64,000 nt of DNA from Ophelia neglecta (taxonomy: Eukaryota), in assembly GCA_965285935.1 (NCBI GenBank), contig OZ260662.1, positions 25,234,001-25,298,000 on the forward strand, given 5' to 3'. Below, piece after piece: positions 7,163-62,007 of the stretch. Position 1 is the stretch's first letter; each line of letters opens with the position of its first letter. Below the pieces are notes generated by a model. The model ran no database searches, had not been told where the DNA came from, and saw only the letters and a program-made list of their open reading frames with translations. A program made the position numbers and the translations under genes.

Positions 7163-10100
7163 ATGGATCTTAAGACGTATTCCAGCCTTGTTTTCTTTGT
7201 CAACGGAAAAAAGGTAAGTTTTCAGCATATTCTGTTTCCTAACTTGCAACAGGACGAATCCTGCTACAAGTAATACAATAAAAAATGATAAGACGCAAAG
7301 ATAAAAGAATGCACTTTTATTTATATAATATTAATGATATAAATGCATGATCGATACCACATTCTCCTTTTGCTGGATAAATTATATATCTGTAAGCGGC
7401 GCCATGTTTAAGCACTAAACGTATTTGTCAAACAAACCTTAACTCGGTTATGATGATATGATGTTACAACTACCGGCCAAACAAGCGCAATACATATTCA
7501 AAGGGCATATTAAAATGTTCAAGTTGCTTTAAGAGAGATATAATCGATGATGACAAATTCTAATTTACCACTGTAAGCAGCTTATGTTCAGTAGAAATGT
7601 TACGTATATTGATGTGCAATAAAGAATGTGATATTTAAGCATGAATATGGTTTGTAGAATAAAACAAATAATAATAATTGATATTAATGTTATTCCTTTA
7701 ATAAAACTATTAATCGTTAGATTTTCCTAGGGGCGCAACTACATGTAATTAGAAATAAACCGTGTCATCTGTTCTGCAGGTAACGGAGCTCAATCCCGAT
7801 CCCGGATGGACATTGCTATTTTACCTCAGAGAAATTTGTATCCTCAATATTGAAAAGTATCTATAATTGGGTTACCTTTGTTAACACTGTCGAACCAGTT
7901 CAACATGGACGTAAGCTTAATTTTATATTTAAGAATAATGTGAAAAGGTACAACCTATGCGGCGAGCACAATGATGCGTGCGTTTTTATCACACACACGT
8001 TATGTATATAACTTGCAAAGCTGCCGCTACGAAACAACTGAAACTAATGAAAGACTAAATAATAGAAAACTCCATTATATTTGACTGCCCACCTGCGCGG
8101 AATACACACTACAATTACTTGGCAAATCAGCGATTAAGTAGTATTCCTGTTTCTTACATATGTCCACAACTGATTTACAAGCTCTTACGCAGTGCAATTT
8201 CCTTTGGGACGCTTTATCAGACAGGCATTTTATTTTTCACTTATTTTGTTAAGATAATGGATAGAGAAAAACAGGTGTGTATACCCGGCAGACTAGGCAA
8301 GATGGTTTACACGGAATTGTGCATTAGATAAGACAGAAATCACTGGTAGTAGGGTTTTCGGGTGGGGGGGGGGGGACACCGAAAATACCCTGGTGCTCTC
8401 CGACGTCTACAACCATACGAACGCGGAAGTGTGCAATAGCGTGTATAAATATCGGACCGAATTCATCAGTAACCGTCTGATTAAGTCCCATAAATACCAA
8501 TCACCAAGTGTGTAAATGTAAGTATCTTGGAACGGAGAACATGAAAGGCTAATCTCGGGGAAATACCGATAAAAACCAGGGTGCTCTAAGACTTCCGGAA
8601 AGGGCTGAGAAAGTTACAGGTATGCTCTACACTTTATTTCCTTTACCACAAAAGTGCGTCTTACAGGAAGTAAAGATGGATGTGGCGAGGGCGGGTGTGG
8701 CGCATGCACCGTGATGCTTTCTGGAATCAACCGGATATCCGGCAAAATATGGTAGTGGAAAGCCAGAAATAAAGAAACTACGAAAAATTGCTCTGGAATA
8801 AATATAACACTATTGTAAACAATAATAATGGACACTAACCATAAGTTAATTTGTTCAGGCACAAGGCCGTGCCTTCGTGTCGTTTTCCAGTGTGTGCAGT
8901 CCATGGTTTGTCCGTGACTACCGTTGAAGGCGTTGGTTCAACAAGGACAAAAGTGCATGTTATTCAGGTTCCTACTCTCCTAGTATTTGAATGAACACAA
9001 CTTTAAAAATAAGAGCAATATATATTGTTAACCTGCACGAATTATGAAACTCTTTTTTGTTTTGTTTTTGCCCGAACTTTCCGATTCAAATCGCACATGC
9101 TCACGTTTTTGTGAAACGAACTCGATTACTTATGGAGTGTTCTGACACGAGAATTTCAAAATGTCAGGACGTGAGATTTACTGTTTTATGAGAAATATCA
9201 ATGGCAACTAACTTAATAATTTTTTTAAAGGAAAGCCTGGCATTGTCTCACGGTACTCAATGTGGATTTTGTACTCCTGGCATAGTGATGTCTATGTATG
9301 CGCTTCTCCGTAATACGCCGAAGCCTTCGCAATTGGAAATAGAACACGCTATCAGAGGTAGGCGGGCAAGTGTACAACCTTTCAAGGCGTTGTAGAATTT
9401 TTCTGAAGCTTAGTTCGGTTTACAGTGTATTTCAGGCAAGTGATTCACAAATACGCAACCACCAGTAAATCTCTTATACCCATGGTCATGTACATGCCTA
9501 TTAACCCAATTTGTCATTTGTTTAGGAAATATATGCAGATGTACAGGATATCGTCCTATACTAGATGGATTCAGAACATTCGCTGACGTATGAATTTTTC
9601 TTTTTTTTTATGAAAACAAACACTGCCAACTTGGTTTACTTCGTATATAAAATTGACTCAGGCAAAAATATCACCAACGCTCTTTGGCTTACATTTATTA
9701 CTGACATTTATACAGACAGAAGACTGCCCATTGGGAGAACAGTGCTGCCAGAACATTCACAAAACGAATATGGACAATTTGCCTGGCAAGGACCAAGTAA
9801 AATAGATGTTTTTCCATATATTACTCATCAAAATTATACTTCCTTGTACGTTTGTATTTTTGGTTTATCGGTATATCCATTAAACATGAATATGGTTTGA
9901 CTTATTCAACACATCATGCAGACAGCTGATTCTGGGGACGATATTGGCGAACATTCCAAGAAGTATGACTCATCCCAAGAGCCTATTTTTCCAAGTGAAT
10001 TGCAGGTAAAACAAATGAATTTATAAAGTGTAACCTCGAAAAGCCCAACGTGACAGAGTATTAGAATATTACGGTGTATTTTTGGGGACACATTTTCATG

Positions 10101-13100
10101 TGCATACACTATTATTAGCTTACAGATGTTTTTGACAGTCAGTGTTTAAAGTACGATTCAGAGCAACTGACTTGGTACAGGCCAGTTTCCCTTCAGCAGT
10201 TGTTATATTTAAAACATGCATATAAGGACGCATTCATTGTCGCGGGAAACACTTTTGGTAAGATGTAGTTATAATTCTAATAATATTACAATAAAATCGC
10301 CAAATTAATGACTATATGTTATTTTTAAGGGAATAAAGCGAATTGCAGAATAGGGTAATATTTACTGCATGACTGGGTCGAAACCTCAATGCTATTGTGG
10401 CACAGTTAGCCCAAAGACATGTATGCAAATGCAAATATGTACGAACATGTAACAATTGTTCACTTTGAATTTAATTATTTTATCTTATCGGGTAAAATGG
10501 CTATAACGATCATGGCAGGGTAAGAAATTTGGAAAAGGGGATTGATAAGTTATGAAGACTCCTTTCTTCTTCTGGAATCCAAGGATTTCGTCATTCCATT
10601 ATTTTTCAATACTACGCCCGACCTGCGTCAATAACACTGGTGTCCCCAGGCAATTTATTTGAGTAAATCATCCAACCTAATTTAGGTCATATGAGGCGCA
10701 GATTGCCAGTTAAGGACACAGTGCTAATATCTACTTCTGCCGTTCCTGAGCTGACAAAACATTCAGTGCATGTTGAGTACATTTCATTCGGCGCCGCAAT
10801 GTCGATGTCTGATGTAGAACGGATTCTTAATCATCACATCGATAATCTGCCCGAGGAAAAGACAAGATACTTTACTGCGCTAAAATCCCAACTTTACAAC
10901 TTTACAGGAGTACAAATAAAAAATATAGCAGTAAGTTAAGACCCGATAATCGATTAATGATGGGCATTAACAGTGCCTCGACTCTTCAGTAATTATTCAT
11001 ATTTGATATATTATCTTCTAAATGGAGTATATTTCTGAAGTAAGGCAGGTGAAATACTTAATCAACCTCACATAGTTGTTGGTGAAGAGTCTCACCTTTC
11101 TGCACTAAGACTGCTTTGTATTTTCCTTTCAAAGACCATAGGAGGTAGTGTAATGACATTGGTTTCAAATGATATCAATACAACCTTGGCATGCATGCCA
11201 GCATCTACTACATTCCTCGTCCCAGGTTTGCAGTACATTTTTAAAGACTAATTACATAATATACTTTCCTTTCTCTGTCAATGTTCACGTCACAAAGATT
11301 ATATTCAGAAAGTTTGCAAAAATGAAACTATGATCAGAAGCTTAAGCATACTTACATATGAGATATACTATAATATTAAATCATAATGTCAGCGTCATTT
11401 TTAAAACCGAAATTTAATAGGAAAAGAAGAACCATCAAGGTTTGTTCAGTATGAAGTGGAAGATTTCTTTAATGGAAAATCAGAAAATAAAACAGACGGA
11501 AACATTCTATTGAATGTCAACGTACCGAAGTCAAGCAGGGTAAGCGAAATATAAACTATGAAATTTAATAATGTAAGTGAAAAGACAATAAAAACAAACT
11601 TGACCTGACACAACATGTTGCGCACATCATCAATCATGTCTTTAAAGGTTGATTCTTCAGCTATGCGGCGATGTACTTTCTTTTTATCTTAGATGGATTA
11701 CATCTCAAGTTATCAAGATTTGGATAAAAACGTTTGCTCTACATTTAGAGTTTGTTTGGACAAAGAACAAAAATTTGTTCATAAATTGGTAGCAACTATT
11801 GGAGATCGGAGAAATGACATAATATGCTTGGAGATACCGCGTCATATTACTGAAAGGTAAATTTGTCTCCAGGCCCTCTCGAGCAATCCACATGGACTCT
11901 TCTTTTCTCCGCTTTCTCATGTCTTAACCACACTGTAATTCCTCCGCCTCTTTATACTTGGCTTTTATTCTAAATTCATGTGTATAAATGTGCTTTGTTT
12001 GACTCAATGGACCCCGACAGGACTTATACTCCATTCCCGGATTTTAAATGCGCTTCGTTTTCTTGAACATCTCAGAACGGTATATGCATTACTCTTTGTT
12101 TTCTAACAGCGCAGAATCTGCACGGCTTGCTGAATTAATTACAGAAAAAGTTGCTGAGAAAACTGACCCCATGGTCCATTCTTTGATCCGCGGGTACTAC
12201 ATCAAGTTTTCAACTGAACTAAATAATTATATTGAGACCGCAGGTGTAGAAAAGTTTTCTCGTGGAAATGAGCATCAGCCTTCTTGTGCCAAAAGGTACG
12301 GTGGTGTACAAATGTATGAACACATGCCATCGAAGGAAAAGTCCATAGAATCAATTGGCAGGTTTTTGCCACATGAATCTGGTATACAACACGCCTGTGG
12401 AGAAGCTGTTTACGTTGATGATATACCTCGTACCTCTGGTGAGTTATTGAACGTTTAACTGACTTTACGAGTCTCTCTCATAATTTAAACTTAGTATGCT
12501 TCAGGGAGATGAAATTCATTTGCCCCACTGTTCAGTAATGTATCACATGGCTTAATATGGCGTAATCAATGTCTTTTAAATTACTTATATTTTCGTACGT
12601 ACCAGGAACAACGTTGGCATGCAGCTGAATAAAATCACTTTAAAAGTCTAATTTACTCATCTTTTTGCTGGGTGCGTTTGAATTTGAATAAACTTATAGA
12701 GGAGCTCCAGATGGCAATGTGTCTTAGCACCAAAGCGCATGCTCGCATCATAAGGATGGATACGTCGGTCGCCCTTGGAATGCCAGGAGTTGTGGATGTG
12801 ATCTCACATAAAGATGTCCCTGCAAAAAATAAATGTGGATTTGGTGGCGACGAGTTAATATTTGCAGTGGATAAAGTATGAATTTTACTACATTGACAGT
12901 TCAAATAAAGCTAAGCGCACAACGGCTAAACACAACGGTTGAACGCATAAAAATTGTTCAATGTGCTAGGGTGATGCCACGGAATCACCGCAATGTACTA
13001 AATACATCATTTTCAGGTTACTTGTTATGGGCAAGTCGTCGCTGCTGTGGTTGCCAACACCAAAGACAAAGCCATGCAAGCAGCCTGTTCTGTAATCATA

Positions 13101-16100
13101 GAATATGAAGACACGGAACCAACCATTGTTACCATTGAGGTTCGCAGGATTTACATTTATTGGAATTAAAAGACACGTGATATTTTATGGCGACATGCAA
13201 TATATTTCCTCTGTGCTTTGCATATTCTTTATTTTGGGAATTCGTGCCTACTAATTAATATCAACCTATCGATATCTAGGGATATAATTACAAGGTAAGG
13301 TGTTATAAGAGTCCAACTCACCCAGGAAAAACTGCACGCGGTTCAGTAAACAACAGCCCAAACTCTTTTTGTATTTAACCGGGACAAACAAGGGAATAAC
13401 TATAGGAAAAACAGACGTGGCACTTTTTTTCTGTTTTCGATAATGGGATCATTTTTCAAAGGCGCAGTCATTCTGAATCCTGCCACATTCGTGGTTTATT
13501 TTGGAAAATGGTTCTAACTCAAATTTAGAAAAGAAAGATTTTTTAATTAAATTATAATTAAATTATGATTGTGGTAAAATGATCCTTTTTTCTAAACGAA
13601 AAAAAGTCATTTGAAAACGTGGTCCTTGTGTTTAAATCAGAGACCAATGCTTACAAACTCTGCTGAATAAAACGGACATTTGTATTATAAACTACTCCTT
13701 GCAACCTTGTGAAATCAAATCAGGACTGAATGCCCGGAAGAGTAAGGAGAGTAAGGAAAGAGTAAGGAAAGTCAATATTTAGTCGATGACTCTTTCCCTC
13801 CTGTCAAATGGATAATTAAGTTACCATTACTTTACCACATAGGCAGTAAAACAGTGGCTTTGAGTGACCTATTACGAAAAATTAGTCTGGTCTATTATAA
13901 ACTTTTCTAATGCATAGTTCAACTATCCTGCGTTGACTACTGTCTAGATCTTTTTGGACTAGTCTCCTGAAAAACTAGTGAGTACGTCCCATTCCAAGTC
14001 AGCTTTGTCTGCCAGGCACTCAGTGCTCTCTTCAGCATGAGTTAGTTCCGTGTTGCACTTGTCCAACCAAATGTTAAATGGCATTTATAAAGAGTTGTTC
14101 ATCGAGCTCTGTTTAATTGATGTATAATGCAATCTGATACCCCCGAATAAGGCATATTCAACAACAGTTGAACTAATCTAATAGTTCTCGACCAATAACC
14201 GCTGTTGAGCGAAAACATAATGATTACTGAATGAAACAATTACACTAGTACACTTATACAACGGTGATGTATGGATGATGATAATTATGTATTTACAAGG
14301 ATGCCATTTGTAAGGAGTCTTTTTATGAAGACCAGCCACACCTGCAACATGGAGATATTGCCGAGGGTTTTTCAGCTAGTGACGAGATTTTGGAGGGACA
14401 AGTCTCGGTTGGTGGACAAGAACATTTCTATATGGAAACGAACGGCTGTATCATTATTCCTAAAAAAGAACGCGAAGAGTTTGAGGTGTGGGTGTCAAGC
14501 CAGGGATTAGCTTATATCCAGGTATCTTTGTTTTTAGTATCATAAGAACAGCGTTCATCACTTCGAGATCATTAAACGCACCTTATCAGATCTTATGTCT
14601 TCAGAATCCCACTCATTTAGGTATTTTGTCAGAATTCATATAACTGATTGTATCATTTTCATGCCGTTTTAATATTGGTTGCTGTCTATTTTTCAGTCAA
14701 ATATTTCAGAGGCCCTCGGAATACCCATGAACAGGATAGTCGTTAAAGCTAAACGCCTGGGTAAACTGTTATTGTTTTTTCCTTAAGAAAATATGGTATA
14801 TATCAAATTGCAACTCGTACTAGATGAAATTTCTATGTCAATGCTGTGGCACAAATTAATATTGATTGCTTAATGACAGGTGGTGGCTTCGGAGGAAAGG
14901 AATTTGATCCGTCTAAAACTTGTTTAGCCGCTGTAGTGGCTGCACACAAGTACATTGATCACATTTTCTGTTTTTTTTTCCATTAAAACATTTTCCGTTC
15001 CAAAGTCTATCATGTAATGTTTATTTACTTTACGGTGCTCAACGACTTGCAATGTATTGTTCTTAAATTTAAATTAAAACGTACCTAAATGCTAATGACA
15101 GGTTAATGAAAAGATCTTTCATGACGAATGATTTAGTTATATCTGTCTTTTTTACAACCACCAGACTCAATCGACCAGTAAGATGTGTGCTTAGCCGAGA
15201 GGAGGACATGCTGATAACCGGTGCAAGGCATCCTATGTTAGCCAACTACAAAGTTGGTTTCAAAAGGTCTGGCCAAATTTCAGCTCTAGACCTGAACATC
15301 TATTGCAATGGAGGAAGCACACGTGGTTTGTCCCCTGGGGTCAGCATGCATGCCTTACCAGTTTGCTTTTGCTTCGCGAGTGTTTATATTATTTGTCTAC
15401 AAATATGATACTTCCACTAAAATGATTTACAGGTATTGATGCATACTATTCTGGCAACCAGTGGTGCATATCATATCCAACATGCCACAGTCCGTGGAAG
15501 GATTTGTAAAACCAATATTACTTCGCCTACTGCTTGCCGAGGTTTCGGCGCACCAGAGGGAACATTTATGTGTGAAACGATAATTACTCACATAGCTGAA
15601 CAACTAAGTGTTTCACAGATCATGGTAAGAGGGAAAATGGTTCCGTTTTTAGTATGTGTTTCCTGAATATATTGCTATATTTATATGCATTCATATCCAG
15701 GGATGTTTAAAATATTTTCTTTATTAGATTCGAGAACTCAATTTGATTAACGAAGATGAGAGAACAATATACAACCAACCTGCTGTTCTCGGCCAACAAC
15801 TAGCCCGTTGTTGGAATGAAGTGAAGAGACAAAGCAGCTATCTTCAAAAGAAAGATGAGATGGACATGTTTAACAGGCAGGCTATTTCAAAATTAGAATT
15901 GACTAAGTACTCAGTAAACATTTAATGAACGACCGAATAATTTGAAATAAAAGGAGTGGCATTCTTTGTTGTAATTCATAATTGTGCATAACGAATATTC
16001 ACTTGTTTGTATTCAACGCAACAGAACTAACAAATTGACTAAACGGGGATTATCCATTGTTCCTATATTGACTGGGACAGGAATTAAACCAGAGTATCCT

Positions 16101-19100
16101 AACCAGGTGAATAATTTATCATCCGATCTAATACGAATAATTACTTTATGAATCAGTACTGAACTAATACATATTCCAATATAATATGCTGGACTGCAAG
16201 CGGTTGTGAGCAAAGCATTGCTATAGAAGTGTTATTCTATTATAGATATGCAGCTTGTAAACAAATGGCCAAACATAATTACATTATAAACAATGAGTAC
16301 TTTTTTATAAACGCTTAGTACAATATGATAATATGTCATATACTAGGGCGGAGCTTTGATGCAGGTGTATCAAGATGGAACAGTGTTACTGTCTCATGGG
16401 GGAATCGAGATGGGTCAGGGAATTAACACTCTCATGGTTCAGGTATGAAGCTAAAAAATAAACAACTTTATTTGCCACCAAGAGTGAACAAGAAAACATA
16501 CACTATTATATTAGGCTCTTAACATATTTGAAACATTAACTAATTGCGGGATATTCCTATAATCTTTCAAATTAGTATATCGTGTCTTAGGTAGCCTCCC
16601 ACTTTCTAGAAATACCTACAGGACAAATCTTTACTATTGAAGCGAGCACGGACAAAGTGCCCAATTCTACGAACACAGCTGCCAGCCACACAGCCGATAT
16701 TATTGGATTTGCGGTGAAGGTAAAACTCCTAAAACAATACCTGAAATAGTTTAGAGGTGTTCTTAAGATAGTTTGTTAGCGGCACTCATGCTCTAGACGT
16801 GTAGCCATATACGTGTTAATATTTTTTATTTGTATGTTTTTATAAACGCTATACATTTATGGAGAGCTGAGGGCAATACTGTCCTATCTGCAATGCCAAC
16901 GCTACAGCAGATAGAACATTGCGTTCATCACTGGATATATCTATTTGCAAAATCCAATATCTATGAAAGTTGTAATGAAGTAGTATTTTGTTGAAAAAGG
17001 ATTAAAAAAAATTACAATTCTACGCACTATCAGCACACTGATAACTTATATTATACCGCAGAATGCTTGTGAGATATTAAAAGAAAGACTGGCGCCTTTT
17101 AAAGAAAGACTTCCAAATGGTTCGTTCAAGGATTGGGTAAGCAATCTTACGAATGCAATGAAAATACTTTAAAATTAGATCAGCTGAATACTTTATTATG
17201 TATTTTTCAACTATTCTTTTGTTCCTTAATTGTTTTTATCCTTTCTTTACATATTTCAGGTGATTGCTGCTTACATGGAAAGAGTTTGTCTTTCTGTAGC
17301 GGGTTTCGCCAAGTATGTGATTAATTGGATACTTTACAACAAAATCTGTTCAAACAGGGAAAACATTATATATTTTCAGTGGTCAATAATCTCATTTCAA
17401 TGTACATTGAAAATCGAAAAAAGTGGCAAATCATCAGATTGTGTATATAGACTGTTACATGCTTTTGAATTATTATCAGATTTGGCACATGTGATTTGGA
17501 CTTCGGGTCACTACAAGAGCCCAAGTCCTTTGAGTACCTCACATATGGAGCAGCGTGTTCATATGTAGAAATAGACTGTCTGACTGGAGAACACAAGGTA
17601 AATATCAATTTGTTGCATATGGGCTTGTTGCTACTAGATCTAGATGATTTCTCACCGCATAAATGGAATATTCTGGATTATTTATTTTTGGCCGCTGTGT
17701 ATCCTATCCCGTTCTTTATGAACTACGATTTAGTGATATGGTTTTATTTCGGCAACTTGTGTTAAAACAATATCTTAACTACCTAAAAAGCACTCCTTCG
17801 TCACTTTAAAATACCTTCCAGTATTGACAATTTATTTCTTTTTCTTTAAGCGGCGTCATCTTTGTCACACTTTTAGTGTCTATGTTCGTGAATTAATATA
17901 AGCGTATAATGTACAGCACTGTGTACCATTATTTGATCAGTCTATAATACCTTTTCCTTATTATTTTGTGCAACAGATTCTCCAAACTGATATCGTGATG
18001 GATGTCGGAAAAAGCATCAATCCAGGAATTGCTATTGGGCAGATAGAAGGAGCATTTGTACAAGTTAGAATTATGAGAACTGTTTTAATCGTTGTATAAG
18101 CTAAAAGACCCAGACTGGCTGTCACGTTAACATATCTTTGGATATGTCGTATATTTTAATCAATTTTGATATATTCAGGCAGTTCCACTTTTGTATCGTC
18201 CCACTTTTGTATCGTCCCACTTAGAGTTGGATCTATCTTCTGATATAGGGCTGGGACTGTGTTTTTTTACTCCGTCAATGCAGATAAGCGTATAAGACGA
18301 TCATAAATACGTTTATTAGCTTTCATGTTTGAATTAGGCAATATAAACATCTACTTTAAATAGGGTCTCGGATTGTACGTGTTGGAGGAATTGCCTTATA
18401 CCAGCGATGGCAAACAATTGTATATTGGCCCTCAAACCTACAAAGTACCTAGGGTTCATCATATTCCAAAACAACTTAATGTGACGCTTCTTAAGGACTC
18501 GTACAACCCGCTCGGAATATGTTCCTCTAAGGTAATTACGTGAAGGAATATATACCAATTAGGACAACGAATTAAAGATCATTACTTTGTATTTATTGTT
18601 TTTAAGGGCTTTTGTATTTGATTTGCGGATACCTGTCGATATATTTCATCAACATGCTGCAGGCCATAGGAGAACCTCCCTTTTTGTCGGCACTGTCCGT
18701 TTTCTTTGCACTAAGAGATGCAGTGATGGCGGCGCGCCAGGAAAGTGGCATTCGTAATAGTTTAGTACTTAACAGCCCACTGACCATGAACAAAATACGG
18801 ATTGCCTGTCGTAACAAAAAGTTAACCGTGGAGGTAACTAATATCTCAATGAGTTTATAAGATATGCTCCGAATGTGCTAATCTAGTTCCGTCAAGAGAG
18901 CTCTGCTAATTCCACATCTTCTCCTACCATACGTCATCGGCAAGAGCTACTTGTAGTAATTATTGTACGAATAAAGTGTAATCCAACTTTTTGGGGAGAT
19001 AAACGAAGATAGAATATAAAAAAAAACATAATATTACATTTACCATCATACACGCGATCTCTCTGGTACTTTGCTTTTACTCTTTCTTGTAGGAAAAGAA

Positions 19101-19149
19101 GAACGGTGATGACAAATTGTTACAACATAATTATCTGATAAAGCATTAG
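7163..19149 (+). CDS. XDH: Xanthine dehydrogenase/aldehyde oxidase-family molybdo-flavoenzyme (2x[2Fe-2S], FAD, Moco domains), 32 coding exons, ~1320 aa; divergent XDH-like paralog
   Basis: Exons: 7163-7213, 7780-7837, 8655-8751, 8859-8967, 9231-9357, 9526-9587, 9716-9796, 9922-10005, 10119-10257, 10686-10930, 11135-11225, 11421-11539, 11693-11856, 12110-12438, 12700-12875, 13017-13139, 14300-14521, 14697-14760, 14880-14949, 15165-15339, 15433-15624, 15728-15876, 16025-16106, 16347-16442, 16591-16719, 17062-17136, 17260-17312, 17480-17597, 17977-18063, 18364-18531, 18663-18833, 19093-19149 (3963 nt, phases compatible, no internal stop). Motifs: [95 protein letters not shown]. The last small exon is less certain (alternative stop at 18858-18860). 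The symbol denotes the family, not proven orthology. Confidence 0.95.
7838..8654 (+). other. U12-type (minor spliceosome) GT-AG intron 2 of the XDH-like gene
   Basis: 5' site GTATCCTC (U12 consensus GTATCCTT); branch-site-like TTCCTTTAC at 8638-8646; no polypyrimidine tract before AAG. Position matches the known U12 intron 2 of animal XDH/AOX genes. Confidence 0.8.
18185..18222. repeat. 16-bp tandem repeat (CCACTTTTGTATCGTC x2.4), intronic
   Basis: Directly visible in intron 29 of the XDH-like gene. Confidence 0.9.
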
Positions 19150-21289
19150 CTTTAAAACCACTATAAACAATGGTAATAGGACCACAGTTTGAGCTCAAGG
19201 GACTGAGTTATACCTGGTGATCAAATTTCGACGTGGGTAACAGCGACCGGTATAATTTTATTGTCAAAATATATGTTTGTTCCAGCTAGCAACATGTTAA
19301 TGTAATATACTAATAGCGATAGCATTTGTTATGTTTCGTGTTACACAATATATAACCTGGTCAAACACTTATTTTGAATGACCGAGGTTGATTTCCAAAG
19401 AGATATATTTGTAAAGAGGTGTGGAACATGTTAGCTAATATATTCAGCCCGTTGATGATGATGAATAAGGCCAGATGTTTTAAGCAGTATTGTACTGCTC
19501 TTCAGAATAATTTTGCAAACCCTTAACCAAGGCAAATTAGCATATACGCAGGGCAAATTTTATATGAATATATAAATAATATAAACAGTTTCATAAAGGT
19601 AGAAATTTTGTCTGGACTTTCATGGTTATAGTTGAATTCTATGATTTTGGAGATATGAATATATAATAAAACTCGACCCTTCAAAAAATATTTTGCTTCA
19701 GTCAGCACTTTCTTAGATATATAGTAATTATGATTAAGGCAAGTTATATAGACAGATGTAAAGCAACGAAAGGCAAACTAGCTCTGGACCACAAATCTTG
19801 TACCTTTCTCCCCCCCCCCCCCCACCCCCACCCCCAAACAACCCCCAACAGTTAAATGTAATCAGGAAAAACCGCCAATCATAATATAAATGACTAAATA
19901 CCTATGTAAATTTCCGATAAAGAGAAGAGTTCGGGGGCGTGGCGTCGTTTGCTGTCATATATGCGGTCGCGTCCGGCATTGTGTTGTCGGTGCGTTGGTT
20001 TGTTTACTGAAGTGTATTGGGCTTGAACCATTAATATATTATATGTCAATGCATGTTATGTGACGCCGAGATTAGTATTCAAGGTATTATATATATATAT
20101 TATTTATTTTTGATGGACCTGTTGGGCTTTGTCTTGTCTCGTAATGGCTCTCTGAGCGATCCAGCCTTATATTTGATCGACGGGGACACGTAGTTTGTGT
20201 CCTTGTGGGTCTACTGCACGGCTGGATTTGCTAAGTGTAATGTTACCCTTCACCACAGTTTCTGAAGTCATAGTTTATTACTTATTTGTTCTTTTGTCAG
20301 ATATATATCTTATCGCTTTCCCTGTCTAGTATGTCATGTTACCAAAATGGCTTCCTAATGGTAGCTCTAACGCTAGCGCATCAAATTGCTACTTAGTGAG
20401 AGTCTCCCAGTGTAAGTAGTATAGTCTTTTTATAACTTACTAAGAAATAATGATGTTGTCAATAATTTTCAATATATTAGTTCTATTGTAACATAATCAA
20501 TATATTCAAGGAATATGGCTGAATAAATAATGTCTGAGTTTGGGTCACTTATTGTGCAATATCTAACAGAGCAAAAAAAACATAGGAAATAACAGCGGTT
20601 ACAGGTGTGGAAACTCATGCATCATGATCAGGTTATCTCTTTAACGGTATATGTGCCTCTATGTTGGACAATTTATTCCTTTTTTTTTTTGGAAAATCAC
20701 TGCACTGTGTCTATACATATTTTTTTAGGCAAATCATTAGATGTCATCAAAGTGAATGAAATTACATAAAATTGGCAAACGTTTTAGGTGTGTTTTAAAA
20801 CAAACAGTACTGCACCTTTTGAGTTTACATATGAATATGGATACCAAAAATTATTGATATATTCGAAAATAGGCGACATCTGACAGCGACTTAATTTGAA
20901 TATACTGGCAGTTTCTGAAATGAATACGATAATGGATATTGATGACACATTGTTGAATGAATGAGCCTTTGAAATTGTTTCCCTTAGATAGTTCCTATAT
21001 TGTCCAACTAACGATAACTCATTTTTTTCTAGTTGAACATATTCGTTTTATTCATCTAAATCGGTGAATTAAGGAATATTCTACTTATGATTATATGAAT
21101 CAAGCAAACAGCTCCATGCGATGAATGAATCAATTAACCATGATATTGGTTGCCTATTATAGTTATTAGCCGCTAGGTGCTATGTCGACGGACCAACATT
21201 AAAATGCAATGTGTATTCACCTAAATTAAATGGATGTTGTATCTCGTGTATCCCATGAACACAAACAGTTCAGTCAAGGCGCAAAATAC

Positions 21290-30792: not shown

Positions 30793-30874
30793 CTTCGCAG
30801 CGAGACATATAACAGTGGCGGCATCAATCCCTCTTATATGCGTGGTGGTCACAGTCGCCTTCCATGAACGTGCC
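30793..30874 (-). pseudogene. Orphan SLC43A3-like exon-4 fragment
   Basis: ARSWKATVTTTHIRGIDAATVICLAAK followed by GT donor, versus copy A exon 4 ARSWKATVTTMFTGGIDAGTVIYLAVK; acceptor, first 11 nt and neighbouring exons missing. Confidence 0.85.
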
Positions 30875-35901: not shown

Positions 35902-36189
35902 CAAGGAAGAAAAAAACCTAAGCTGAAGCAAAGCAAACCAGACGACCATTAACCAAAAATAAGGCGTCCGTAAACACGTCCCAAAGGTCACTTCGGATGT
36001 AGGTTCAGGGTAGGGAAGACGATTTACCGTAGATTTCTTTGCTACAAAATAATACAAACTTTGGGGTATTGTGGTAACAATAGAAAAAGACAGAGAACCT
36101 TGATTCCTACAGGAATGAAACTTGAGGAGTTACAAGTACGCATGACAGTGCTGCGAGCTTTCCTCAGCGAAAGCATAGTTTAATAGTTA

Positions 36190-49367: not shown

Positions 49368-52300
49368 TCACAATTTTGTGGTGAACTCAGGATGTATACT
49401 TTTAGTTGGTAGGCTAAAGCTCCGAATTTTGTAAGTGGTTTTGTGATATCGTTTGTAGGATACTTCGATGTAGATAGGGAGCATTGATGTGAGACAAACC
49501 AAGATTAACATAACTCCGTTTACCTGAAACATAAAAGTATTGAATATATATATACACTAGTCGCCTGACTAGCCACTGGATGTATCCTATAGATTTAGCA
49601 TTCAGACGGTGTAATGAGAGTGTTCACAGTTATAAAATGTATTTCACTGAAGATTCGTTTTTATATATTTAGCAGCAAATTAATATTTTAACATTGCGTT
49701 TCTGAACATGATTCACATACTCTGATTAACTTTAACGGTGGCCTATTTTTCAAACAATTATTTTCTAATTTTACTTACCATCAGGAAATTGTGTGATGAT
49801 TCAGCCCATATATAGAAGGCATGCTGCAAAGACGCAATGGCGGCGGCCATAAGATACATAAAACCGAGACACTTCCCATATACAGCGGAGGGAAAACTAG
49901 AGGATAAAACGAAATCCACATACAGAAAACCTCCACACGTGGTTAGTACTCTAATTAACTATTATGGTAACAGTATGGCTAGCTTGCATCTTAAGGATGA
50001 TATGGACATCTAATCGATGCGACTTGGATCGATAATCTGGGTTTTGGGTCGGATATCCTTCTTATTATAGAAGTTTTGGAATACAATTTGACGAAAGAAG
50101 TAAACTAACTTTGATTTTGCCCAATATTTAAATGGCCAAATCGTTTCTAGACATTATATACTTTGACCGAACCATTGTTACTTTCCATCAGCCAACTGTC
50201 TTTTATTGGATTTAACCCAAAAACATCGAGCTTACACGAGATTTGCGTAAACAATCACGTTTCCAAAGAGGACAGATCGCATTAATTGAAGAAGCACCAA
50301 AGTCACATAGACCATGACGTCACTAAAGAAGAATGTGGACACTGAGAGCGCAATTCCTAGTACCGATCCAAGGCAGAGCTTGGTGATACTGCTTTTGCCA
50401 TTGTCAGGAAAGGAATATTGCTTTCATTACCTTAGTGATAGAAAAGTAAATGTAACGAAACTGACTGGAATAATTTAATTTTTCGGCTTAGGTAGATTAT
50501 TTAATAATAAAACCATTACAAAATACGTCAGCAAAATAAGAGTTATATACACCACTGTTCGTCCAAAGATTATTAGCATTATTCGAACTAACATTTCGAT
50601 GTTGAATATGGTTCAATAGGATGGGGGATTTAGAATATGATTTATATATTATATATTGCTATTGGTACCCACATATGCTTCGTTTAACAGATATATCAGT
50701 CATTATTCCTGATACAGGTGCCGTTAGAAGACTGCCGAACGTTATATAAGTAAACGCATTTACGTAAGAATCCACTAGAAATGCAAGATATCCATACAGA
50801 AAATTATACAAAGGCACTAAAAAGGCAATTGTTATAATGATAGTGGAACCAAGCTAGTTCACTTTCATAGTAATTTATTATATCATGGTGGATTAACGTG
50901 CCCACTAAGCTAGACTGGTGCACCCTATAGTCTAAAGTTGGCATCAGCAAGATGACTCTTGTCATATACACTGTATATTGACCGCCTTCAAAACATATGT
51001 GCTGGTATTACTGATATTGATGGATGAACTATAAGGGGTTTCACGGTGAATACCTTTATGCCTCCTCGCCCTTGCTTTCAGTTTCAAACCCCATTAAACA
51101 CCATCTTCAAAATAACCAGGTACTTGCATATTGTAATGGGCAAAGTGAAGTGTTAAACTATCCTTGGAATCAATGCCGCCTCATATACATCATGCTCCTA
51201 AACCTAGTTCATTTTAGTATTAAACCAATCCTTCGCTGTTGAGACCAGTATTAAACATATTTTGCCCCGTGCAAGCCTTATTCGCATTGATAATGTCCAC
51301 TGTCTTAATGGGTTGTTGAAATAAATACCAGGTACCTCTTTGTACATCATTGTCTGTATTGACAGAAAGCCACGTATTCATACTACCAACGAAGAAAAAG
51401 AATCGAAGTCGAAGCAGGGAAAACCAGACGACCATTAACCACAAATAGGGCGTCCGTAAACACGTCACAAAAGTCACTTCGTTAACAGGCTCAAGACCGA
51501 AAATTCGATTCGTAGTAAGTTTATATGCTGCAACAGTATAAGCCGAATCTCTTGTTTCTTAGAAAATGAAAAGTGCTAAGTCATTCAATGTTGTAATATC
51601 GTATTTGTAATAGAATAATCCTAAACATTCAACTAGACTATATGCGCTAGACGGGCTGGATACTAGTATCATATAACATATAACATACTTATATTATTGC
51701 CTATATGCCAGTATGATAAATAAAATTATCTAATGATATCTTTTGAAAATGGTTAGGCTTACTTTTGCTTCCTCTTTCGGGCTCCAATCCGCCAGTACTG
51801 TTGTTTTGTGTAGTTTTCTCGTCGACGATTTCCTGAAGTGATATTTTAAAGCGAGGACAGCAGACGAAGGTGTTGGCAATCACAATGAGCCAGGCTCCTG
51901 CCAAAAAAGCCAAGGACGCTCGATGAGTGACACCGTGATTTTCATAAATCAGCTGTAAAAATCAGTGTAAAATCACACAAAAGAATTAAGAGAAGGCTTG
52001 CTGTGTAATTTCATTGGAAAAGTACGGTTTAAATTGACTCGCAATAAACTTTTAAAGAATATTCAAAACATACTTTAGTCAATCTAATAAATATATTTAT
52101 ATCTTCACAGCAAGAAACATAACAGTACCGGCACCGATTCCGCCATTGTAAATGGTTGTCACGGTCGCTTTCCAAGACAGTGCCGCCAGAGGCAACTACA
52201 AATTATTGATAGTTTTATACGCAAACGGATGACGGTGATAAAAATGTTTTCAGTACGAATGTTTTGGTATTCGCTTTTGTGTGTCGTGATGGGTTTCTTT

Positions 52301-54029
52301 GTTTATATAATTATGGTTTTAATACATTTTAGAAGTAAGTTATTTTGGAAAGGATCCACGTTTTCTGGTTTATTCCCGAAAGATATTGCATGCATATTTT
52401 ATATAAAATATAAATTCACGGAAGGACGCGTTCAATGAGCAATACAATTAATAGTGGGAAAGGGTTTCGTCTTCAACGCCACATCGACTTAGGGGAGGGA
52501 CGATTATAATAATTATACAGTTTGGCTTAATGGGGGATACGTTATTACATCGGCATCCTGATGCATGGGTTGCGACGTCGCAGAAGAACATGATTTAAGA
52601 ATAGTTAACATTAATCTCTTCCAGCCAGGAGAGGGAGGTTTCTTGACAGTGAACACCGACGAAGGGGATAGGCCGGTAACAAAAACACAGTAGAACTGAG
52701 ATGTTTCGTTGTTTTATACTAAGACAAATATTTGCTATCAAAACTGGTTCTACCTCGGAATTGTAATAAATAAACAGTATGACCGGCCCCTATGCCTTCT
52801 CGGTCCTTGAGAATTGGAGTCATGTAGCCAGGAAGTATTATGAGGAACTAGGGGTAGTAGCGCTGAGCCAAGTTATGAAGAAATAACATCATTTTTATAG
52901 TGTGACACACAGGAGCATAGGTGATCATATCATATTAATTCAATTAAGTAAGACTCATGTGTGAATTTCAGTTTTATTTTTACTCACATGGCAAGCAGTA
53001 ACGACGATGTGCATTCCAGCGATTGATACCATCAACAGTCCGGGAAGTATCATATAGGAAAAGACTGAAAAACAATTCAGTATGCAATAAAGCAGCATCA
53101 TAAGATTTAAATCACGGCATATTATGCTGATTTCAGTCCATCTGCTACTTTAATTTAGACATTTCATTTATGTAATTGTGAATATGGCTTTTATTTATTT
53201 ATAAAAGTTTGTATGGGTTCTGTTCTTAATTGAACAAGCAGGTTCGCTTATTATCGTTTATAAAGTCAAACTTACTCCCTTCTTGTGCAAACATCAACAT
53301 CAATATCCCAGGAATAAAGAAAGCACTGTAATTATTTCAAGAAAATTTTATATAAAGATAAGGTAGAGTTTGTTTTATTAGGCGTTTTAAAGGGGAAAAA
53401 ATATTGACAAACATGACAGTGATTATGCAACAACGGTGAAGGTATTTGGACAGGGTTCGATACTGAATATAAAGAGGCCAAATGAAAATAGAATTGACGG
53501 TTTTGGATCTCATTTCAATTATAACCGGTGCTCTGCTCGGAAAAAAAATAGATACCGAATAAATAGTTTTTTATACAGTGAAAAAATAAAAAAGCACAAG
53601 TATTTATAATCGATTGAAACTCGACTGAGATGCTTAACCATTATAATTTTAGAGCAAACAATTTTGTACTTTCACATTCCACCAACACTATTATAAGATC
53701 ACTTACATTGCGGATGCTCTGGTTATCCAGAATCCGTATCGGTCAAAGATCAACCCAATGGGGAAGGAACTTGCTTGACATGCGGCGCTGGATAGGCTGA
53801 AGCATAAACTGAACATTCTGTCTGCCTCAGCGCACAAAAGGTCGGCCGACTCAGTCCCGTTATTCAGTTCAACTCTCGTCGAGTTCTGACACAGATGAGA
53901 GAAAACACCGGCTTTCTGGTACAACAACACCAGGTTTGGCCACCCGACAAAGATGGCGCCGAACGAAACACATTCTACAAATCCCAAAACTAAGGATGTG
54001 ATGACTTTTTCTAGGTTCCTGGTGGCCAT
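49368..54029 (-). pseudogene. SLC43A3: SLC43A3-like copy D: full-length but with two disabling lesions (young pseudogene)
   Basis: Exons: 54029-53707, 53325-53276, 53064-52988, 52195-52103, 51952-51763, 51527-51336, 50774-50673, 50430-50236, 49896-49779, 49523-49368. Exon 8 is 195 nt (1-nt deletion at 50378/9: GGCAGAGCTT vs GGCAGAGACTT in C and E). The intron-4 donor reads AT instead of GT (52102-52101). Confidence 0.8.
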
Positions 54030-59077: not shown

Positions 59078-62007
59078 TCATAATTTTGTGGTGAACACAT
59101 GATGTATACTCTTAGTTGGTAGGCTTGAGCTTCGAATTTTGTTAGTGGTTTTGTGATATCGTTTGTAGGATACTTCGATGTAGAGAGGGAGCATTAATGT
59201 GAGAACAACCAACATTAACATAACTCCGTTTACCTGAAACATAAAAGGTATTAAATATTAATGGACACTAGTCGCCTGACTAGCCACTGGATGTATCCTG
59301 TAGATTTAGCATTCAGGCGGTGTAATGGGAGTGTTCACAGTTATAATATGTATACCACTAAATATCGTTTTTATATATAAGGAAGCAAATTAATATTTTA
59401 ACATTGCGCTTCTAAATATGATGCCCATATTGTAATTAACTTAAGTGGTGGCATAATTTTCAAACAATTATTTTCTTAATTGGACTCACCATCAGGAAAT
59501 TGTTTGATGACTCAGCCCATATATAGAAGGCATGCTGCAAAGACGCAATGGCGGCGGCCATAAGATACATTAAACCGAGACACTTTCCATATACAGCGGA
59601 GGGAAAACTAGAGGATAAAACGAAGTCAAGTTACAGAACAACTCCACACGTGGTGAGTACTCTAATTAACTAGTATGCAAACAGTGAGGCTAGCTAACAT
59701 TTTAAGACTGATATGGACATATCTAATCGATACCACTTGGATCAATAATTTGGGTTTGTGGTCGGATATCCTTCTTATTATAGAAGCCTTGGAATATAAT
59801 TAGACGAAAGAAGTAAACTTATTTCGATTTTGCCCAATATTTAAATGGCCAAATCGTTTCTAGATATTAATACTTTGACCGAACCATTGTTTTTTTCCAA
59901 CAGCCAACTGTCTTTTTTATTGTGATTTAACCCAAAAACATCGAGCTTACACGAGACTTGCGTAAACAATCACGTTTCCAAAGAGGACAGATCGCATTAA
60001 TTGAAGAAGAACCAAAGTCACATAGACCATGACGTCAGTAAAGAAGAACGCGGAAACTGAGAGCGCAATTCCTAGTGCTGATCCAAGGCAGAGACTTGGT
60101 GATATTGCTTTAGCCATTGTCAGGAACGGAATATTGCTTTCATTACCTTAGTTATAGAATAGAAAAAGTAACGAAACTGACTGAAATTATTTAATTTCGG
60201 TTACTCATGTATACATTAACACAGCTACGTGAAATACTCTTCTAGATTTTGGTGAGATTATTGAATAATAAAAACCTTACAAAATACGTCAGCAAAATAA
60301 GAGTTAAATACATTACTGTTCGTCCAATGATTATAAGCATTATTTGAAGTAAACATTTCGAAGTCGAATATGGTTTGATAGGATGGGGGAGTTAGAATAT
60401 TGATTTATATATTATATATTGCTATTGGTACTCACATACGCCTCGTTTAACAAACATATCAGTCATTATTCCTGATAGAGGTGCCGCTAGAAGACTGCCG
60501 AACGTAATGTAAGTAAACGCATTTACGTAAGAATCCACTAAAAATGCAAGAGATCCATACAGAAAATTATACAAAGGCACTGAAAAGGTAATTGTTTCTA
60601 TGCTAGCGGAACCAAGCTTGTTCATTTTTATAGTAATTTTTTATATTATACTGGATTAACTAGCCCACTAAACAAGACTGGTGCCCCCTGTAGTCTTAAG
60701 TTGGCAGCTGCAAGATGACTCTTTTGATATATATTGACCGCCTTTAAAACAACACATGTGCTGGTATTACTTATATTGTTGGAAGATCTGTGTTGCACGG
60801 TGAATTCCTTTATGCCTCTTCGCCCATGCTTTCAGCTTCAAACCCCATTAAAGGTCCTCTTTAAAATACGCAACCAGGTACTTAGATTTAGTAGTTGGCA
60901 AAGTCCCATGTTAAAATATCCTAAGCTTCAACGCCTCCTCATATACATCGTGCTCCTTACCCTGGTTCATTTTAAGTATTAAAACAGTACTTCGCTGTTT
61001 GTGAAACAAGAGGCAAATAGTTGTATTTCATACCTTGATATCAGAATTTAACATATTTTTCCCCGCGCATGCCTTATTCGTAATAAATATAGCCACTGCA
61101 TTAATTGGTTATTGAAATTAATCCCAGGTACCTCTTTGTACATCGTTGTCTGTATTGAAAGAAAGCCACGTATTCATACTACCAACGAAGAAATAGAATC
61201 GAAGATATAGCAGAGAAAACCAGACGACCATTAACCACAAATAGGGCGTCAGTAAACACGTCACAAAAGTCACTTCGTCAACAGGCTCAAGACCGACAAT
61301 ACGATTCGTAGTAAGTTTATTTGCTGCAAAGGTATCAGTCAAATGTGTTGTGTCTTAGAAAATCATTTACGAGTGCTAAGTCATTTAATGTTGTAATATC
61401 GTATTTGTAATAAATTAATCCTAAACATTCAACTAGACTATATGCCCTAGACGGGCTGGATACTAGTATCATACAGCATATAACATACTTATATTATTGT
61501 CTTTATGATCGTATGATAAATAAAATATACGTCAATTTTTTAATAAATGATATTAAGAATGAAATCTTTCGAAAATGGTTCGGCTTACATTTGCTTCCTT
61601 TTTCGGGCTCCAATCCGCCAGGACTGTTGTTTTGTTTATTTTTCTCGTCGACGATTTCCTGAAGTGATATTTTATAGCGAGGACAACAGACGAAGGTGTT
61701 GGCAATCACAATGAGCCAGGCTCCTGCCAAAAAAGCCAAGGACGCTCGATGAGTGACACCATGATTTTTATAAATCAGCTGTAAAAATCGGTGTTAAAGC
61801 ACACAAGAGAATTAAGAGAAGGCTGGCTGTGTTTTTCTATTGGAAAAGTACGGTTTAAATTGAATCTCAATAAACTTTTAAAGAATATTCAATATAATCA
61901 ATATAAATATATACCTTTAAAGCAAGAAACATAACAGTACCGGCATCGATTCCGCCATTGTAAATGGTTGTCACGGTCGCTTTCCAAGAGTGTGCCGCCA
62001 GAGGTAA
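59078..62007 (-). CDS. SLC43A3: SLC43A3/ENBT1-like MFS transporter, copy E (exons 4-10; exons 1-3 expected beyond the window)
   Basis: Exons: 62007-61915, 61778-61589, 61323-61132, 60537-60436, 60146-59951, 59607-59490, 59233-59078; all canonical and the same sizes as copy C; ends FTTKL*. Sequence 63722-64000 matches intron 3 of C/D. Confidence 0.88.

What the first reader, a model, noticed from the sequence alone, without database searches (positions are those of the whole stretch)
7163..62007. Candidate animal metabolic gene cluster: remodelled xanthine-oxidoreductase paralog tail-to-tail with an expanded SLC43A3-like nucleobase transporter array
Seen: a complete XDH/AOX-family gene ends 2.1 kb from the stop codon of the first of at least five tandem SLC43-family genes. 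Established: mammalian SLC43A3 (ENBT1) is an equilibrative purine nucleobase transporter (adenine, guanine, hypoxanthine), and XDH-family enzymes hydroxylate purines, pterins and other N-heterocycles, so two unrelated families acting on one chemical class are neighbours. Both look diversified: the enzyme pocket is altered and the transporters vary at a TM7 polar site. Inference: an uptake/oxidise/export module for a purine- or pterin-like compound (excretion, pigment or biocrystal precursor, diet- or symbiont-derived heterocycle). Such clusters are rare in animals. Chance adjacency is possible because both families can be multi-copy in invertebrates.
Basis: partly seen in the sequence, partly recalled or inferred. 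Interest (0 to 1): 0.8.

Follow-up and report, generated by a model that had tools for sequence, protein, structure and literature searches.

The report
Aldehyde-oxidase-like genes flanking nucleobase-transporter array
In a probable annelid worm genome, an intact aldehyde-oxidase-type relative of xanthine dehydrogenase really does sit 2.4 kb from a tandem array of nucleobase-transporter-like genes, but nothing I could test shows that enzyme and transporters work together, and both families are large here.

Summary
XDH-L (7163-18860, +) is an intact 31-exon, 1298-residue gene of the xanthine-oxidase family. Five SLC43A3/ENBT1-like loci follow on the minus strand. A, C and E are intact 10-exon genes. 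D carries a 1-base deletion and a lost splice donor in the reference. B is a wreck beside a LINE insertion. A second paralog, XDH-R, lies 8 kb past the window's end and closes the array on the other side, but it has an in-frame TAA.

XDH-L is not a xanthine dehydrogenase. It keeps Gln767, Glu802, Arg912, Phe914 and Glu1261, but has Arg880→His and Phe1009/Thr1010→Ile/Lys. The canonical XDH is on another chromosome. The genome holds at least 12 XDH-family loci and about 11 ENBT1-like loci, and they adjoin only here.

The transporters vary at a TM7 site (Gln, Arg or Tyr) that aligns with the substrate-contacting Gln335 of LAT4.

- Enzyme and transporter genes did not duplicate together.
- Three distant invertebrates show no such linkage.
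- Close relatives exist only as contigs of 3 kb or less.
- No RNA data were served.

A working transporter-oxidase module is therefore untested, and I put it at about 0.2.

The parts
7163..18860 (+). XDH-L: intact 31-exon gene of the xanthine-oxidase (XDH/AOX) molybdo-flavoenzyme family, 1298 aa
   Evidence: Spliced alignment to full-length references gives 31 GT-AG exons and no internal stop. Exon-level Pfam hits: Fer2, Fer2_2, FAD_binding_5, Ald_Xan_dh_C, MoCoBD_1.
8655..9587 (+). Exons 3-6: the two 2Fe-2S domains, cysteine motifs kept
   Evidence: Fer2 (E 2.5e-4) and Fer2_2 (E 2.3e-14). Translation.
10119..12438 (+). Exons 9-14: divergent flavin domain. FAD_binding_5 is weakly detected and CO_deh_flav_C is not detected.
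   Evidence: The oyster relative P0049 also has no PF03450 hit on record.
14900..14902 (+). Codon equivalent to bovine Glu802: Glu kept
15442..15444 (+). Codon equivalent to bovine Arg880: His
   Evidence: PDB alignment to mouse AOX3 and rat/bovine XDH. Paralog table. Coordinates.
16083..16088 (+). Codons equivalent to bovine Phe1009 and Thr1010: Ile and Lys
   Evidence: Numbering is anchored through the genome's canonical XDH exon aligned to bovine 1FO4 positions 995-1048. Paralog alignment. Coordinates.
18672..18674 (+). Codon equivalent to the catalytic base Glu1261: Glu kept
18861..21289 (.). 2,429-bp spacer between the convergent stops of XDH-L and SLC43 copy A. It holds no shared promoter.
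   Evidence: Gene models.
21290..27067 (-). SLC43 copy A: intact 10-exon ENBT1-like MFS gene, 503 aa, TM7 site Gln (24453-24455)
   Evidence: Exon 1 scores 4.5e-13 against ENBT1 (9l38) and 3.4e-6 against LAT4.
30790..30873 (-). Stray fragment resembling exon 4 of the 10-exon SLC43 model (the third query exon): remnant of a dead copy
   Evidence: tblastn, E 7e-5.
33544..36054 (-). SLC43 copy B: pseudogene. Only exons 6, 8, 9 and 10 are recognisable, two of them with frameshifts. Exons 1-5 are absent.
   Evidence: Split tblastn hits. Also found by the genome searches.
36195..40981 (+). LINE-type retroelement (endonuclease plus reverse transcriptase) where the 5' half of copy B should be
   Evidence: RVT_1. 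Exo_endo_phos.
42263..46939 (-). SLC43 copy C: intact 10-exon gene, 512 aa, TM7 site Gln (44354-44356)
   Evidence: Exon 1 scores 6e-14 against ENBT1 and 1.8e-6 against LAT4.
49368..54029 (-). SLC43 copy D. The reference has a 1-nt deletion in exon 8 (50378/50379) and an AT in place of the GT donor after exon 4 (52101-52102). TM7 site Arg (51409-51411). Probably decaying or polymorphic.
   Evidence: Contigs of two of three runs carry an extra base at 50378 that restores the frame. Contigs from paralogs also lay on this stretch.
59078..62007 (-). SLC43 copy E, exons 4-10. Exons 1-3 lie at 64208-65075, outside the window. Intact, 512 aa, TM7 site Tyr (61205-61207).
62210..64000 (-). Reverse-transcriptase-bearing element inside intron 3 of copy E
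   Evidence: ORFs with an RT-type motif. No family scan was run on it.

Best explanation
This is a real physical neighbourhood of two independently expanding gene families. It is not a demonstrated metabolic module.

XDH-L encodes a probably active cytosolic molybdenum hydroxylase of aldehyde-oxidase type. Both Fe-S domains, the molybdenum-domain residues Gln767, Glu802, Arg912 and Phe914, and the catalytic base Glu1261 are kept. Arg880 and the Phe1009/Thr1010 loop, which fit the pocket to xanthine and hypoxanthine, are replaced, and the flavin domain is divergent. I infer that it hydroxylates some aldehyde or N-heterocycle other than xanthine.

The adjoining genes encode 10-exon MFS carriers nearest to ENBT1/SLC43A3. 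I infer that they are facilitative carriers of small nucleobase-like solutes.

The array grew by tandem duplication after the enzyme paralogs had already diverged, and it turns over by birth and death: one copy is dead, one is frameshifted, and retroelements have inserted. The copies differ at a TM7 residue that aligns with a substrate-contact residue of LAT4.

The adjacency most likely reflects co-residence in a duplication-prone stretch of chromosome C2 that holds half of the genome's XDH-family loci, with lectin-like repeats and a MACPF gene as neighbours. Cooperation on one substrate is possible but unsupported.
For: Shown:
- Gene models and intactness.
- Domain content.
- Active-site table: only the locus at C1:117.17 Mb has Glu802, Arg880, Phe1009 and Thr1010. 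XDH-L, XDH-R and C2:24.07 Mb have His, Tyr and Tyr at position 880 and a replaced loop.
- These three form one clade with SH-aLRT 100.
- There are at least 12 XDH-family loci, six of them on C2 between 24.07 and 25.31 Mb.
- There are about 11 ENBT1-like loci on C2, C9, C7 and C12, none near another XDH-family locus.
- ENBT1 scores above LAT4 for exon 1 and for TM7.
- The TM7 site aligns with LAT4 Gln335, which PMC13269557 names as part of the substrate site.
- dS is 0.09-0.12 among C, D and E, 0.9 for A against C, and at least 1.2 (saturated) among the XDH paralogs. dN/dS is 0.25-0.56 for the transporters and 0.08-0.18 for the enzymes. The families therefore duplicated at different times, and both have been under constraint.
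- Decay: B fragments and the LINE, D's lesions, and the TAA in XDH-R.
- The flanks hold no other purine-pathway gene.
- No SLC43 homolog lies within 10 kb of XDH-like genes in Glandiceps, Saccostrea or Owenia.

From the literature:
- Arg880 is never conserved in aldehyde oxidases, and its mutation abolishes use of xanthine (PMC5746545).
- Only the Glu1261 equivalent is essential for catalysis (PMC2671166).
Against: - The array is bracketed on both sides by members of one enzyme clade. For this particular pair of families, random placement gives about 1e-3.
- Mammalian ENBT1 carries purine bases and 6-mercaptopurine. By my own knowledge, XO and AOX oxidise such heterocycles, so a shared substrate class is chemically plausible.
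- A fungal precedent exists in which an XDH paralog is clustered and co-regulated with two MFS carriers.
- The absence of linkage was shown only for distant, non-orthologous XDH-like genes.
- Expression was not testable.
Confidence: 0.55

Rival explanations
1. A true transporter-oxidase module. One or more of the ENBT1-like carriers import or export an N-heterocycle (purine analogue, pterin, pyridine) that XDH-L hydroxylates, and the genes are kept together by shared regulation, as in the fungal nicotinate (hxn) cluster.
For: - Physical linkage at 2.4 kb, with a second clade member on the far side of the array.
- The enzyme and three carriers are intact and under purifying selection.
- The pocket of the enzyme is altered, and the carriers differ at a substrate-contact position.
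- There is a precedent for an XDH paralog clustered with MFS carriers (PMC5746545).
- ENBT1 substrates include purines and 6-mercaptopurine.
Against: - The convergent orientation means there is no shared promoter.
- The unit did not co-duplicate, judged by dS.
- The nearest paralog, at C2:24.07 Mb, has no SLC43 neighbour, and no other SLC43 cluster has an XDH neighbour.
- XDH-R carries a nonsense codon.
- No further pathway genes lie in the flanks.
- No linkage was seen in three other invertebrates.
- There is no expression evidence.
Confidence: 0.2
2. A loose xenobiotic-handling island. The region gathers fast-evolving environmental-response genes (AOX-like oxidases, solute carriers, lectin-like genes, MACPF). 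They may be induced together by diet or microbes without sharing a specific substrate.
For: - Birth-and-death pattern in both families.
- dN/dS of 0.44-0.56 among the young transporter copies.
- The neighbours are lectin-like repeats and a MACPF gene.
- Half of the XDH-family loci cluster within 1.3 Mb of C2.
Against: No expression data. The lectin-like exons gave no Pfam hit at E < 0.01. 'Island' is a weak concept that is hard to falsify.
Confidence: 0.2
3. An assembly artefact joins unrelated loci.
For: None specific. All three runs are of one sample, possibly the one the window was assembled from, so their support is not independent.
Against: The extended 124-kb stretch has no N. Three runs hold 66-72% of the sampled words across 14200-24000, which spans the XDH-L/copy A junction.
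Confidence: 0.03

Closest known systems
Aspergillus nidulans nicotinate (hxn) cluster: HxnS (XDH paralog) with the MFS carriers HxnP and HxnZ (PMC5746545)
   Same: A duplicated XDH-family hydroxylase with an altered substrate pocket lies next to MFS transporter genes.
   Different: The fungal cluster is shown to be co-induced by one regulator, HxnR. It also holds further pathway enzymes. HxnS keeps Arg880. Here there is no regulator, no further enzyme and no expression evidence. Arg880 is lost, and the carriers belong to the SLC43 branch.
Animal aldehyde oxidases (mouse AOX3, PDB 3zyv; human AOX1, 4uhw)
   Same: The domain order is the same. The Arg880 position is not Arg (Tyr in mouse AOX3, His here). 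The Phe1009/Thr1010 loop is replaced. The catalytic Glu is kept.
   Different: Glu802 is kept here, whereas the two vertebrate AOX sequences in my alignment have Val or Thr. The flavin domain is more divergent. In the tree, XDH-L does not group with vertebrate AOX: it sits in a lineage-specific clade of three genes, weakly joined to an oyster protein.
Canonical xanthine dehydrogenase (bovine, PDB 1FO4; this genome's own copy at C1:117.17 Mb)
   Same: Same family and architecture. Gln767, Glu802, Arg912, Phe914 and Glu1261 are shared.
   Different: Arg880 to His, and Phe1009, Thr1010, Val1011 and Leu1014 to Ile, Lys, Pro and Pro. The canonical gene is on another chromosome and has no SLC43 neighbour.
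Human ENBT1 / SLC43A3 (PDB 9l38)
   Same: It is the best solved-structure match for exon 1 (E 6e-14 and 4.5e-13) and for the TM7 profile (E 0.0013), ahead of LAT4. The TM7 Gln (ENBT1 Gln290) is kept in copies A and C.
   Different: Only the N-terminal exon and TM7 are detectable exon by exon. There are about 11 loci instead of one. Copies D and E have Arg and Tyr at the TM7 Gln. Transport is untested.

Membership tests
Xanthine-oxidase family of molybdo-flavoenzymes (XDH/AOX) | Two N-terminal 2Fe-2S domains | tested here: met
   Fer2 and Fer2_2 hits on exons 3 and 5. The cysteine motifs are visible in the model.
Xanthine-oxidase family of molybdo-flavoenzymes (XDH/AOX) | Central FAD domain (FAD_binding_5 plus CO_deh_flav_C) | tested here: inconclusive
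   FAD_binding_5 is found only at sub-threshold exon scores (21.5 and 26.9 bits, cut-off 27). The three exon reading frames scanned from this part (window 11135-11248, 11693-11857 and 12048-12455) gave no Pfam hit, so CO_deh_flav_C was not found. The joined protein could not be scanned.
Xanthine-oxidase family of molybdo-flavoenzymes (XDH/AOX) | a/b-hammerhead and molybdopterin-binding domains, with catalytic Glu1261 and Gln767 | tested here: met
   Ald_Xan_dh_C and MoCoBD_1 hits. Gln and Glu are present at the equivalent codons.
Bona fide xanthine dehydrogenase (purine-specific) | Arg880 (bovine numbering) | tested here: not met
   His at 15442-15444. XDH-R and the C2:24.07 Mb paralog have Tyr.
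Bona fide xanthine dehydrogenase (purine-specific) | Glu802 | tested here: met
   The GGGFGGKE motif is kept.
Bona fide xanthine dehydrogenase (purine-specific) | Phe1009/Thr1010 pocket loop | tested here: not met
   Ile and Lys. The numbering is anchored through and the alignment is.
SLC43 family, ENBT1 (SLC43A3) branch | MFS carrier whose sequence is nearer to ENBT1 than to LAT3/LAT4 | tested here: met
   Exon 1 scores 55.5 and 53 bits against ENBT1 and 31.5 and 30.8 against LAT4. The TM7 profile gives E 0.0013 against 0.046. This rests on two exons only. LAT3 did not appear among the matches.
SLC43 family, ENBT1 (SLC43A3) branch | Placement with SLC43A3 in a full-length tree that includes SLC43A1 and SLC43A2 | not testable with these tools
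   No full-length SLC43 reference could be fetched. Exon-length queries reach only proteins of up to 1.75 times their length, and joined models may not be submitted.
SLC43 family, ENBT1 (SLC43A3) branch | Facilitative transport of purine nucleobases | not testable with these tools
   Needs uptake assays.
Metabolic gene cluster | Non-homologous genes physically adjacent | tested here: met
   2.4 kb between XDH-L and copy A. XDH-R lies 7.1 kb from exon 1 of copy E.
Metabolic gene cluster | Members act in one pathway or on one substrate | not testable with these tools
   Inference only. The enzyme's pocket is not that of a purine hydroxylase.
Metabolic gene cluster | Co-expression or co-regulation | not testable with these tools
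   No RNA run was served for this organism.
Metabolic gene cluster | Linkage conserved in relatives | tested here: inconclusive
   Linkage is absent around XDH-like genes of Glandiceps, Saccostrea and Owenia, but those genes are not orthologs of XDH-L. Close relatives are present only as contigs of 3 kb or less.

The most novel reading that the evidence does not exclude
An animal counterpart of the fungal hxn cluster: a neofunctionalised XDH-family hydroxylase kept beside a diversifying set of ENBT1-like carriers, which together take up and oxidise a dietary, microbial or pigment-related N-heterocycle in an annelid.
Probability: 0.15. Interest if true: 0.75.

Novelty: new member of a known kind. 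Interest (0 to 1): 0.35.

Why it matters
Functional metabolic gene clusters are common in fungi and plants and very rare in animals. A confirmed transporter-plus-hydroxylase cluster would be a useful case, and it would hint at substrates for two poorly understood families: invertebrate AOX-like enzymes and ENBT1-like carriers.

As it stands, the solid results are descriptive:
- This genome, probably an annelid's, has one canonical XDH and at least eleven divergent paralogs.
- It has about eleven ENBT1-like loci.
- Young tandem copies differ at a residue that aligns with a substrate-contact position of LAT4.

These results give a short list of genes for expression and assay work. They do not establish a new kind of system.

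Tried and rejected
- **RNA evidence.** The one sequencing-run search returned only three DNA runs of one sample, so co-expression is untestable.
- **Synteny in close relatives.**
  - The closest XDH-L-like fragments in the protein libraries sit on Logan contigs of 1.1 and 1.5 kb.
  - A profile of SLC43 exon 1 found only eight proteins, all on contigs of 3 kb or less.
  - A word search with the oyster relative P0049 returned almost only canonical XDHs and no annelid ortholog among the 120 listed.
- **Exon-wise PDB searches.** SLC43 exons 6 and 8 taken singly gave nothing. XDH exon 19 taken singly gave nothing. A ten-sequence profile of exon 6 did work.
- **Other family look-ups.**
  - The ESM Atlas search on exon 1 of copy A gave only generic MFS clusters.
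  - Pfam found no family above threshold on single SLC43 exons; the only hit was a sub-threshold ZapC_C match on exon 1 that I take for chance.
- **Rescue of XDH-R by an alternative acceptor.** Rejected: the stop is TAA and no in-frame AG follows it.
- **D's frameshift as an assembly error.** Not settled. Two of three contig sets carry a frame-restoring base at 50378, but paralog contigs demonstrably cross-map on this stretch. At 51409-51412 one contig shows copy E's Tyr codon.
- **Joined models.** Spliced proteins were used only in local scripts (alignment, tree, dN/dS). They were not sent to any search or folding tool, so there is no full-length Pfam scan, structure prediction or homolog search of the joined proteins.
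- **Simple hydropathy count of TM helices.** Too crude to report.

Full report
**Setting.** The window is G000:C2:25234001-25298000 of a 762-Mb, 223-contig assembly. It has 37% G+C, contains no N, and has the look of an intron-rich animal genome. Notes by other agents on this genome call it an annelid. I did not verify this. It fits the finding that the nearest full-length relatives of the enzyme come from an oyster, two hemichordates, a sea cucumber and the annelid Owenia. Only three DNA runs of one sample hold the sequence, and no RNA run was served.

**The enzyme gene.** Stop-free frames on the plus strand between 7.1 and 18.9 kb carry the motifs of the xanthine-oxidase family. Exon-level Pfam hits are Fer2, Fer2_2, FAD_binding_5, Ald_Xan_dh_C and MoCoBD_1.

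One exhaustive search with exon 17 supplied full-length references. I wrote a protein-to-genome spliced aligner and ran it with three of these references. The final model, XDH-L, has 31 exons, all GT-AG. The ATG is at 7163 and the stop at 18858-18860. It encodes 1298 residues with no internal stop.

**The active site.**
- A PDB alignment of exon 21 places His at the position of bovine Arg880, which is Tyr885 in mouse AOX3.
- To anchor the other numbers I located the genome's canonical XDH at C1:117.17 Mb. Its exon aligns to bovine 1FO4 residues 995-1048 with Phe1009 and Thr1010 in register.
- In the alignment of all paralogs, XDH-L keeps Gln767, Glu802, Arg912, Phe914, Ala1078, Ala1079 and Glu1261.
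- It has His at 880 and Ile, Lys, Pro and Pro at 1009, 1010, 1011 and 1014.
- Arg880 is never conserved in aldehyde oxidases, and its mutation abolishes use of xanthine (PMC5746545).
- Only the Glu1261 equivalent is essential for catalysis, and specificity is not set by three residues alone (PMC2671166).

XDH-L is therefore most likely an active hydroxylase of aldehyde-oxidase type, not a xanthine dehydrogenase.

The flavin domain is divergent. FAD_binding_5 is found only at sub-threshold exon scores, and CO_deh_flav_C was not found on the exon frames scanned. This agrees with the two earlier notes on this window.

**The transporter genes.** Nine conserved exon frames recur on the minus strand. 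Alignment of the four best copies exposed the splice sites. A frame mismatch after exon 1 revealed a missed 50-nt exon. The final models have 10 exons.

- A (21290-27067), C (42263-46939) and E (59078-65075, with exons 1-3 beyond the window end) are intact, at 503-512 residues.
- D (49368-54029) has a 1-nt deletion in exon 8, and an AT where the exon-4 donor should be.
- B is reduced to four recognisable exons with frameshifts (33544-36054). It lies next to a LINE with endonuclease and reverse-transcriptase domains.

Contigs of public runs laid on D show an extra base at 50378 in two of three runs. That base would restore the frame. On the same stretch, one contig carries copy E's Tyr codon at 51409-51411, so paralog contigs cross-map. 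The status of D stays open.

**Family assignment of the carriers.**
- Exon 1 of C and of A match human ENBT1 (PDB 9l38) at E 6e-14 and 4.5e-13, against 1.8e-6 and 3.4e-6 for LAT4.
- Single C-terminal exons were not detectable.
- A ten-sequence profile of the TM7 exon hit ENBT1 at E 0.0013 and LAT4 at E 0.046.
- In that alignment the Gln of the motif LLQLR falls on ENBT1 Gln290 and LAT4 Gln335.
- The LAT4 structure paper lists Gln335 among the five residues of the substrate site (PMC13269557).
- This position is Gln in A, C and the two copies on C9. It is Arg in D, Tyr in E, and Leu or Phe in more distant copies.

A full-length tree with SLC43A1, A2 and A3 could not be built, because no full-length reference was reachable.

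**Beyond the window.**
- A Pfam MoCoBD_1 search of the whole genome found at least 12 XDH-family loci, six of them on C2 between 24.07 and 25.31 Mb. One lies just right of the window.
- I fetched the flanks. They hold XDH-R on the minus strand at window-relative 72174-83148, with the same 31-exon layout. The SLC43 array is thus bracketed by two paralogs.
- XDH-R has an in-frame TAA at the third codon of exon 25, and no in-frame alternative acceptor follows it. In the reference it is probably a recent pseudogene.
- In a maximum-likelihood tree of the molybdenum domains, XDH-L, XDH-R and the locus at C2:24.07 Mb form one clade (SH-aLRT 100). They are 70-76% identical.
- An oyster protein is a weakly supported sister (84). 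The canonical XDH lies outside the group formed by all the other animal rows (support 94).
- Searches with SLC43 exons 1, 6 and 8 found the C2 array plus two loci on C9, one on C7 and three to five on C12. None is near any other XDH-family locus.
- The C12 copies are also nearer to ENBT1 than to LAT4.

**Does adjacency mean function?**

For it:
- The spacing is tight.
- One enzyme clade lies on both sides of the array.
- The shared substrate class is chemically plausible. ENBT1 carries purines and 6-mercaptopurine, and by my own knowledge XO and AOX oxidise such heterocycles.
- A fungal precedent exists.

Against it:
- The genes are convergent, so they share no promoter.
- The duplication histories differ. 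dS is 0.09-0.12 among C, D and E and 0.9 between A and C. It is at least 1.2 and saturated among the enzyme paralogs.
- The nearest enzyme paralog has no carrier neighbour.
- The flanks hold lectin-like repeats, an intronless GPCR-like ORF and a MACPF gene, and no further purine gene.
- XDH-like genes of Glandiceps, Saccostrea and Owenia have no SLC43 homolog within 10 kb. Those genes are not orthologs of XDH-L, so this test is weak.

Random placement of about 8 and about 6 clusters in 762 Mb gives roughly 1e-3 for a pair within 10 kb. The pair was chosen after the fact, and half of the XDH-family loci are concentrated in 1.3 Mb of C2.

**Verdict.** The uptake/oxidise/export module is neither shown nor excluded.

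I favour co-residence of two families evolving by birth and death (0.55). A specific module comes next (0.2), level with a loose xenobiotic-response island (0.2).

Spliced protein models were used only in local scripts and were never submitted to a search or folding tool.

Noticed in passing
L001-L002, window-relative 72174-83148 (minus strand): XDH-R is a second paralog of the XDH-L clade, with Tyr at position 880. It closes the SLC43 array on the far side. In the reference it carries an in-frame TAA at codon 3 of exon 25 (74029-74027).
   Followed up: yes
G000:C1:117173901-117183900 (L015): This is the genome's only canonical XDH, with Glu802, Arg880, Phe1009 and Thr1010 kept. One exon matches bovine XDH at 83.5 bits. 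It is unlinked to any SLC43 gene.
   Followed up: yes
G000:C2:24.07-24.36 Mb (L018-L021): Four more XDH-family loci lie about 1 Mb upstream of the window. One is the closest paralog of XDH-L. The other three are very divergent: Ile, Ala or Tyr at position 802, and Pro at position 914.
   Followed up: partly
window 428 down to L005 (window-relative -843), minus strand: An intronless 424-codon ORF with a hydrophobic N-terminus that looks like a GPCR. Its first 142 residues gave no Pfam hit.
   Followed up: partly
L006-L005, window-relative -19350 to -8400, plus strand: Tandem repeats of exons that look like C-type lectin domains, repeated every 5 to 6 kb. Single exons gave no Pfam hit at E < 0.01.
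   Followed up: partly
L003:7727-9313 (window-relative 91727-93313), plus strand: A single 529-codon ORF with a MACPF domain (E 2e-37) and a weak PAN domain.
   Followed up: partly
window 54700-55050: A low-complexity (GACA/GAGA)n stretch that reads as long open frames on both strands. It is not a gene.
   Followed up: no
window 50378 and 51409-51412: Public contigs laid on copy D show a frame-restoring inserted base in two of three runs. One contig shows copy E's Tyr codon at D's TM7 site. This could be an allele, gene conversion or cross-mapping of paralogs.
   Followed up: partly
L011 (Owenia fusiformis, CAIIXF020000008.1): Three XDH-like genes lie in tandem in Owenia. All have Ala at position 880 and Glu at position 802. 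This is an independent local expansion of the family in another annelid.
   Followed up: partly
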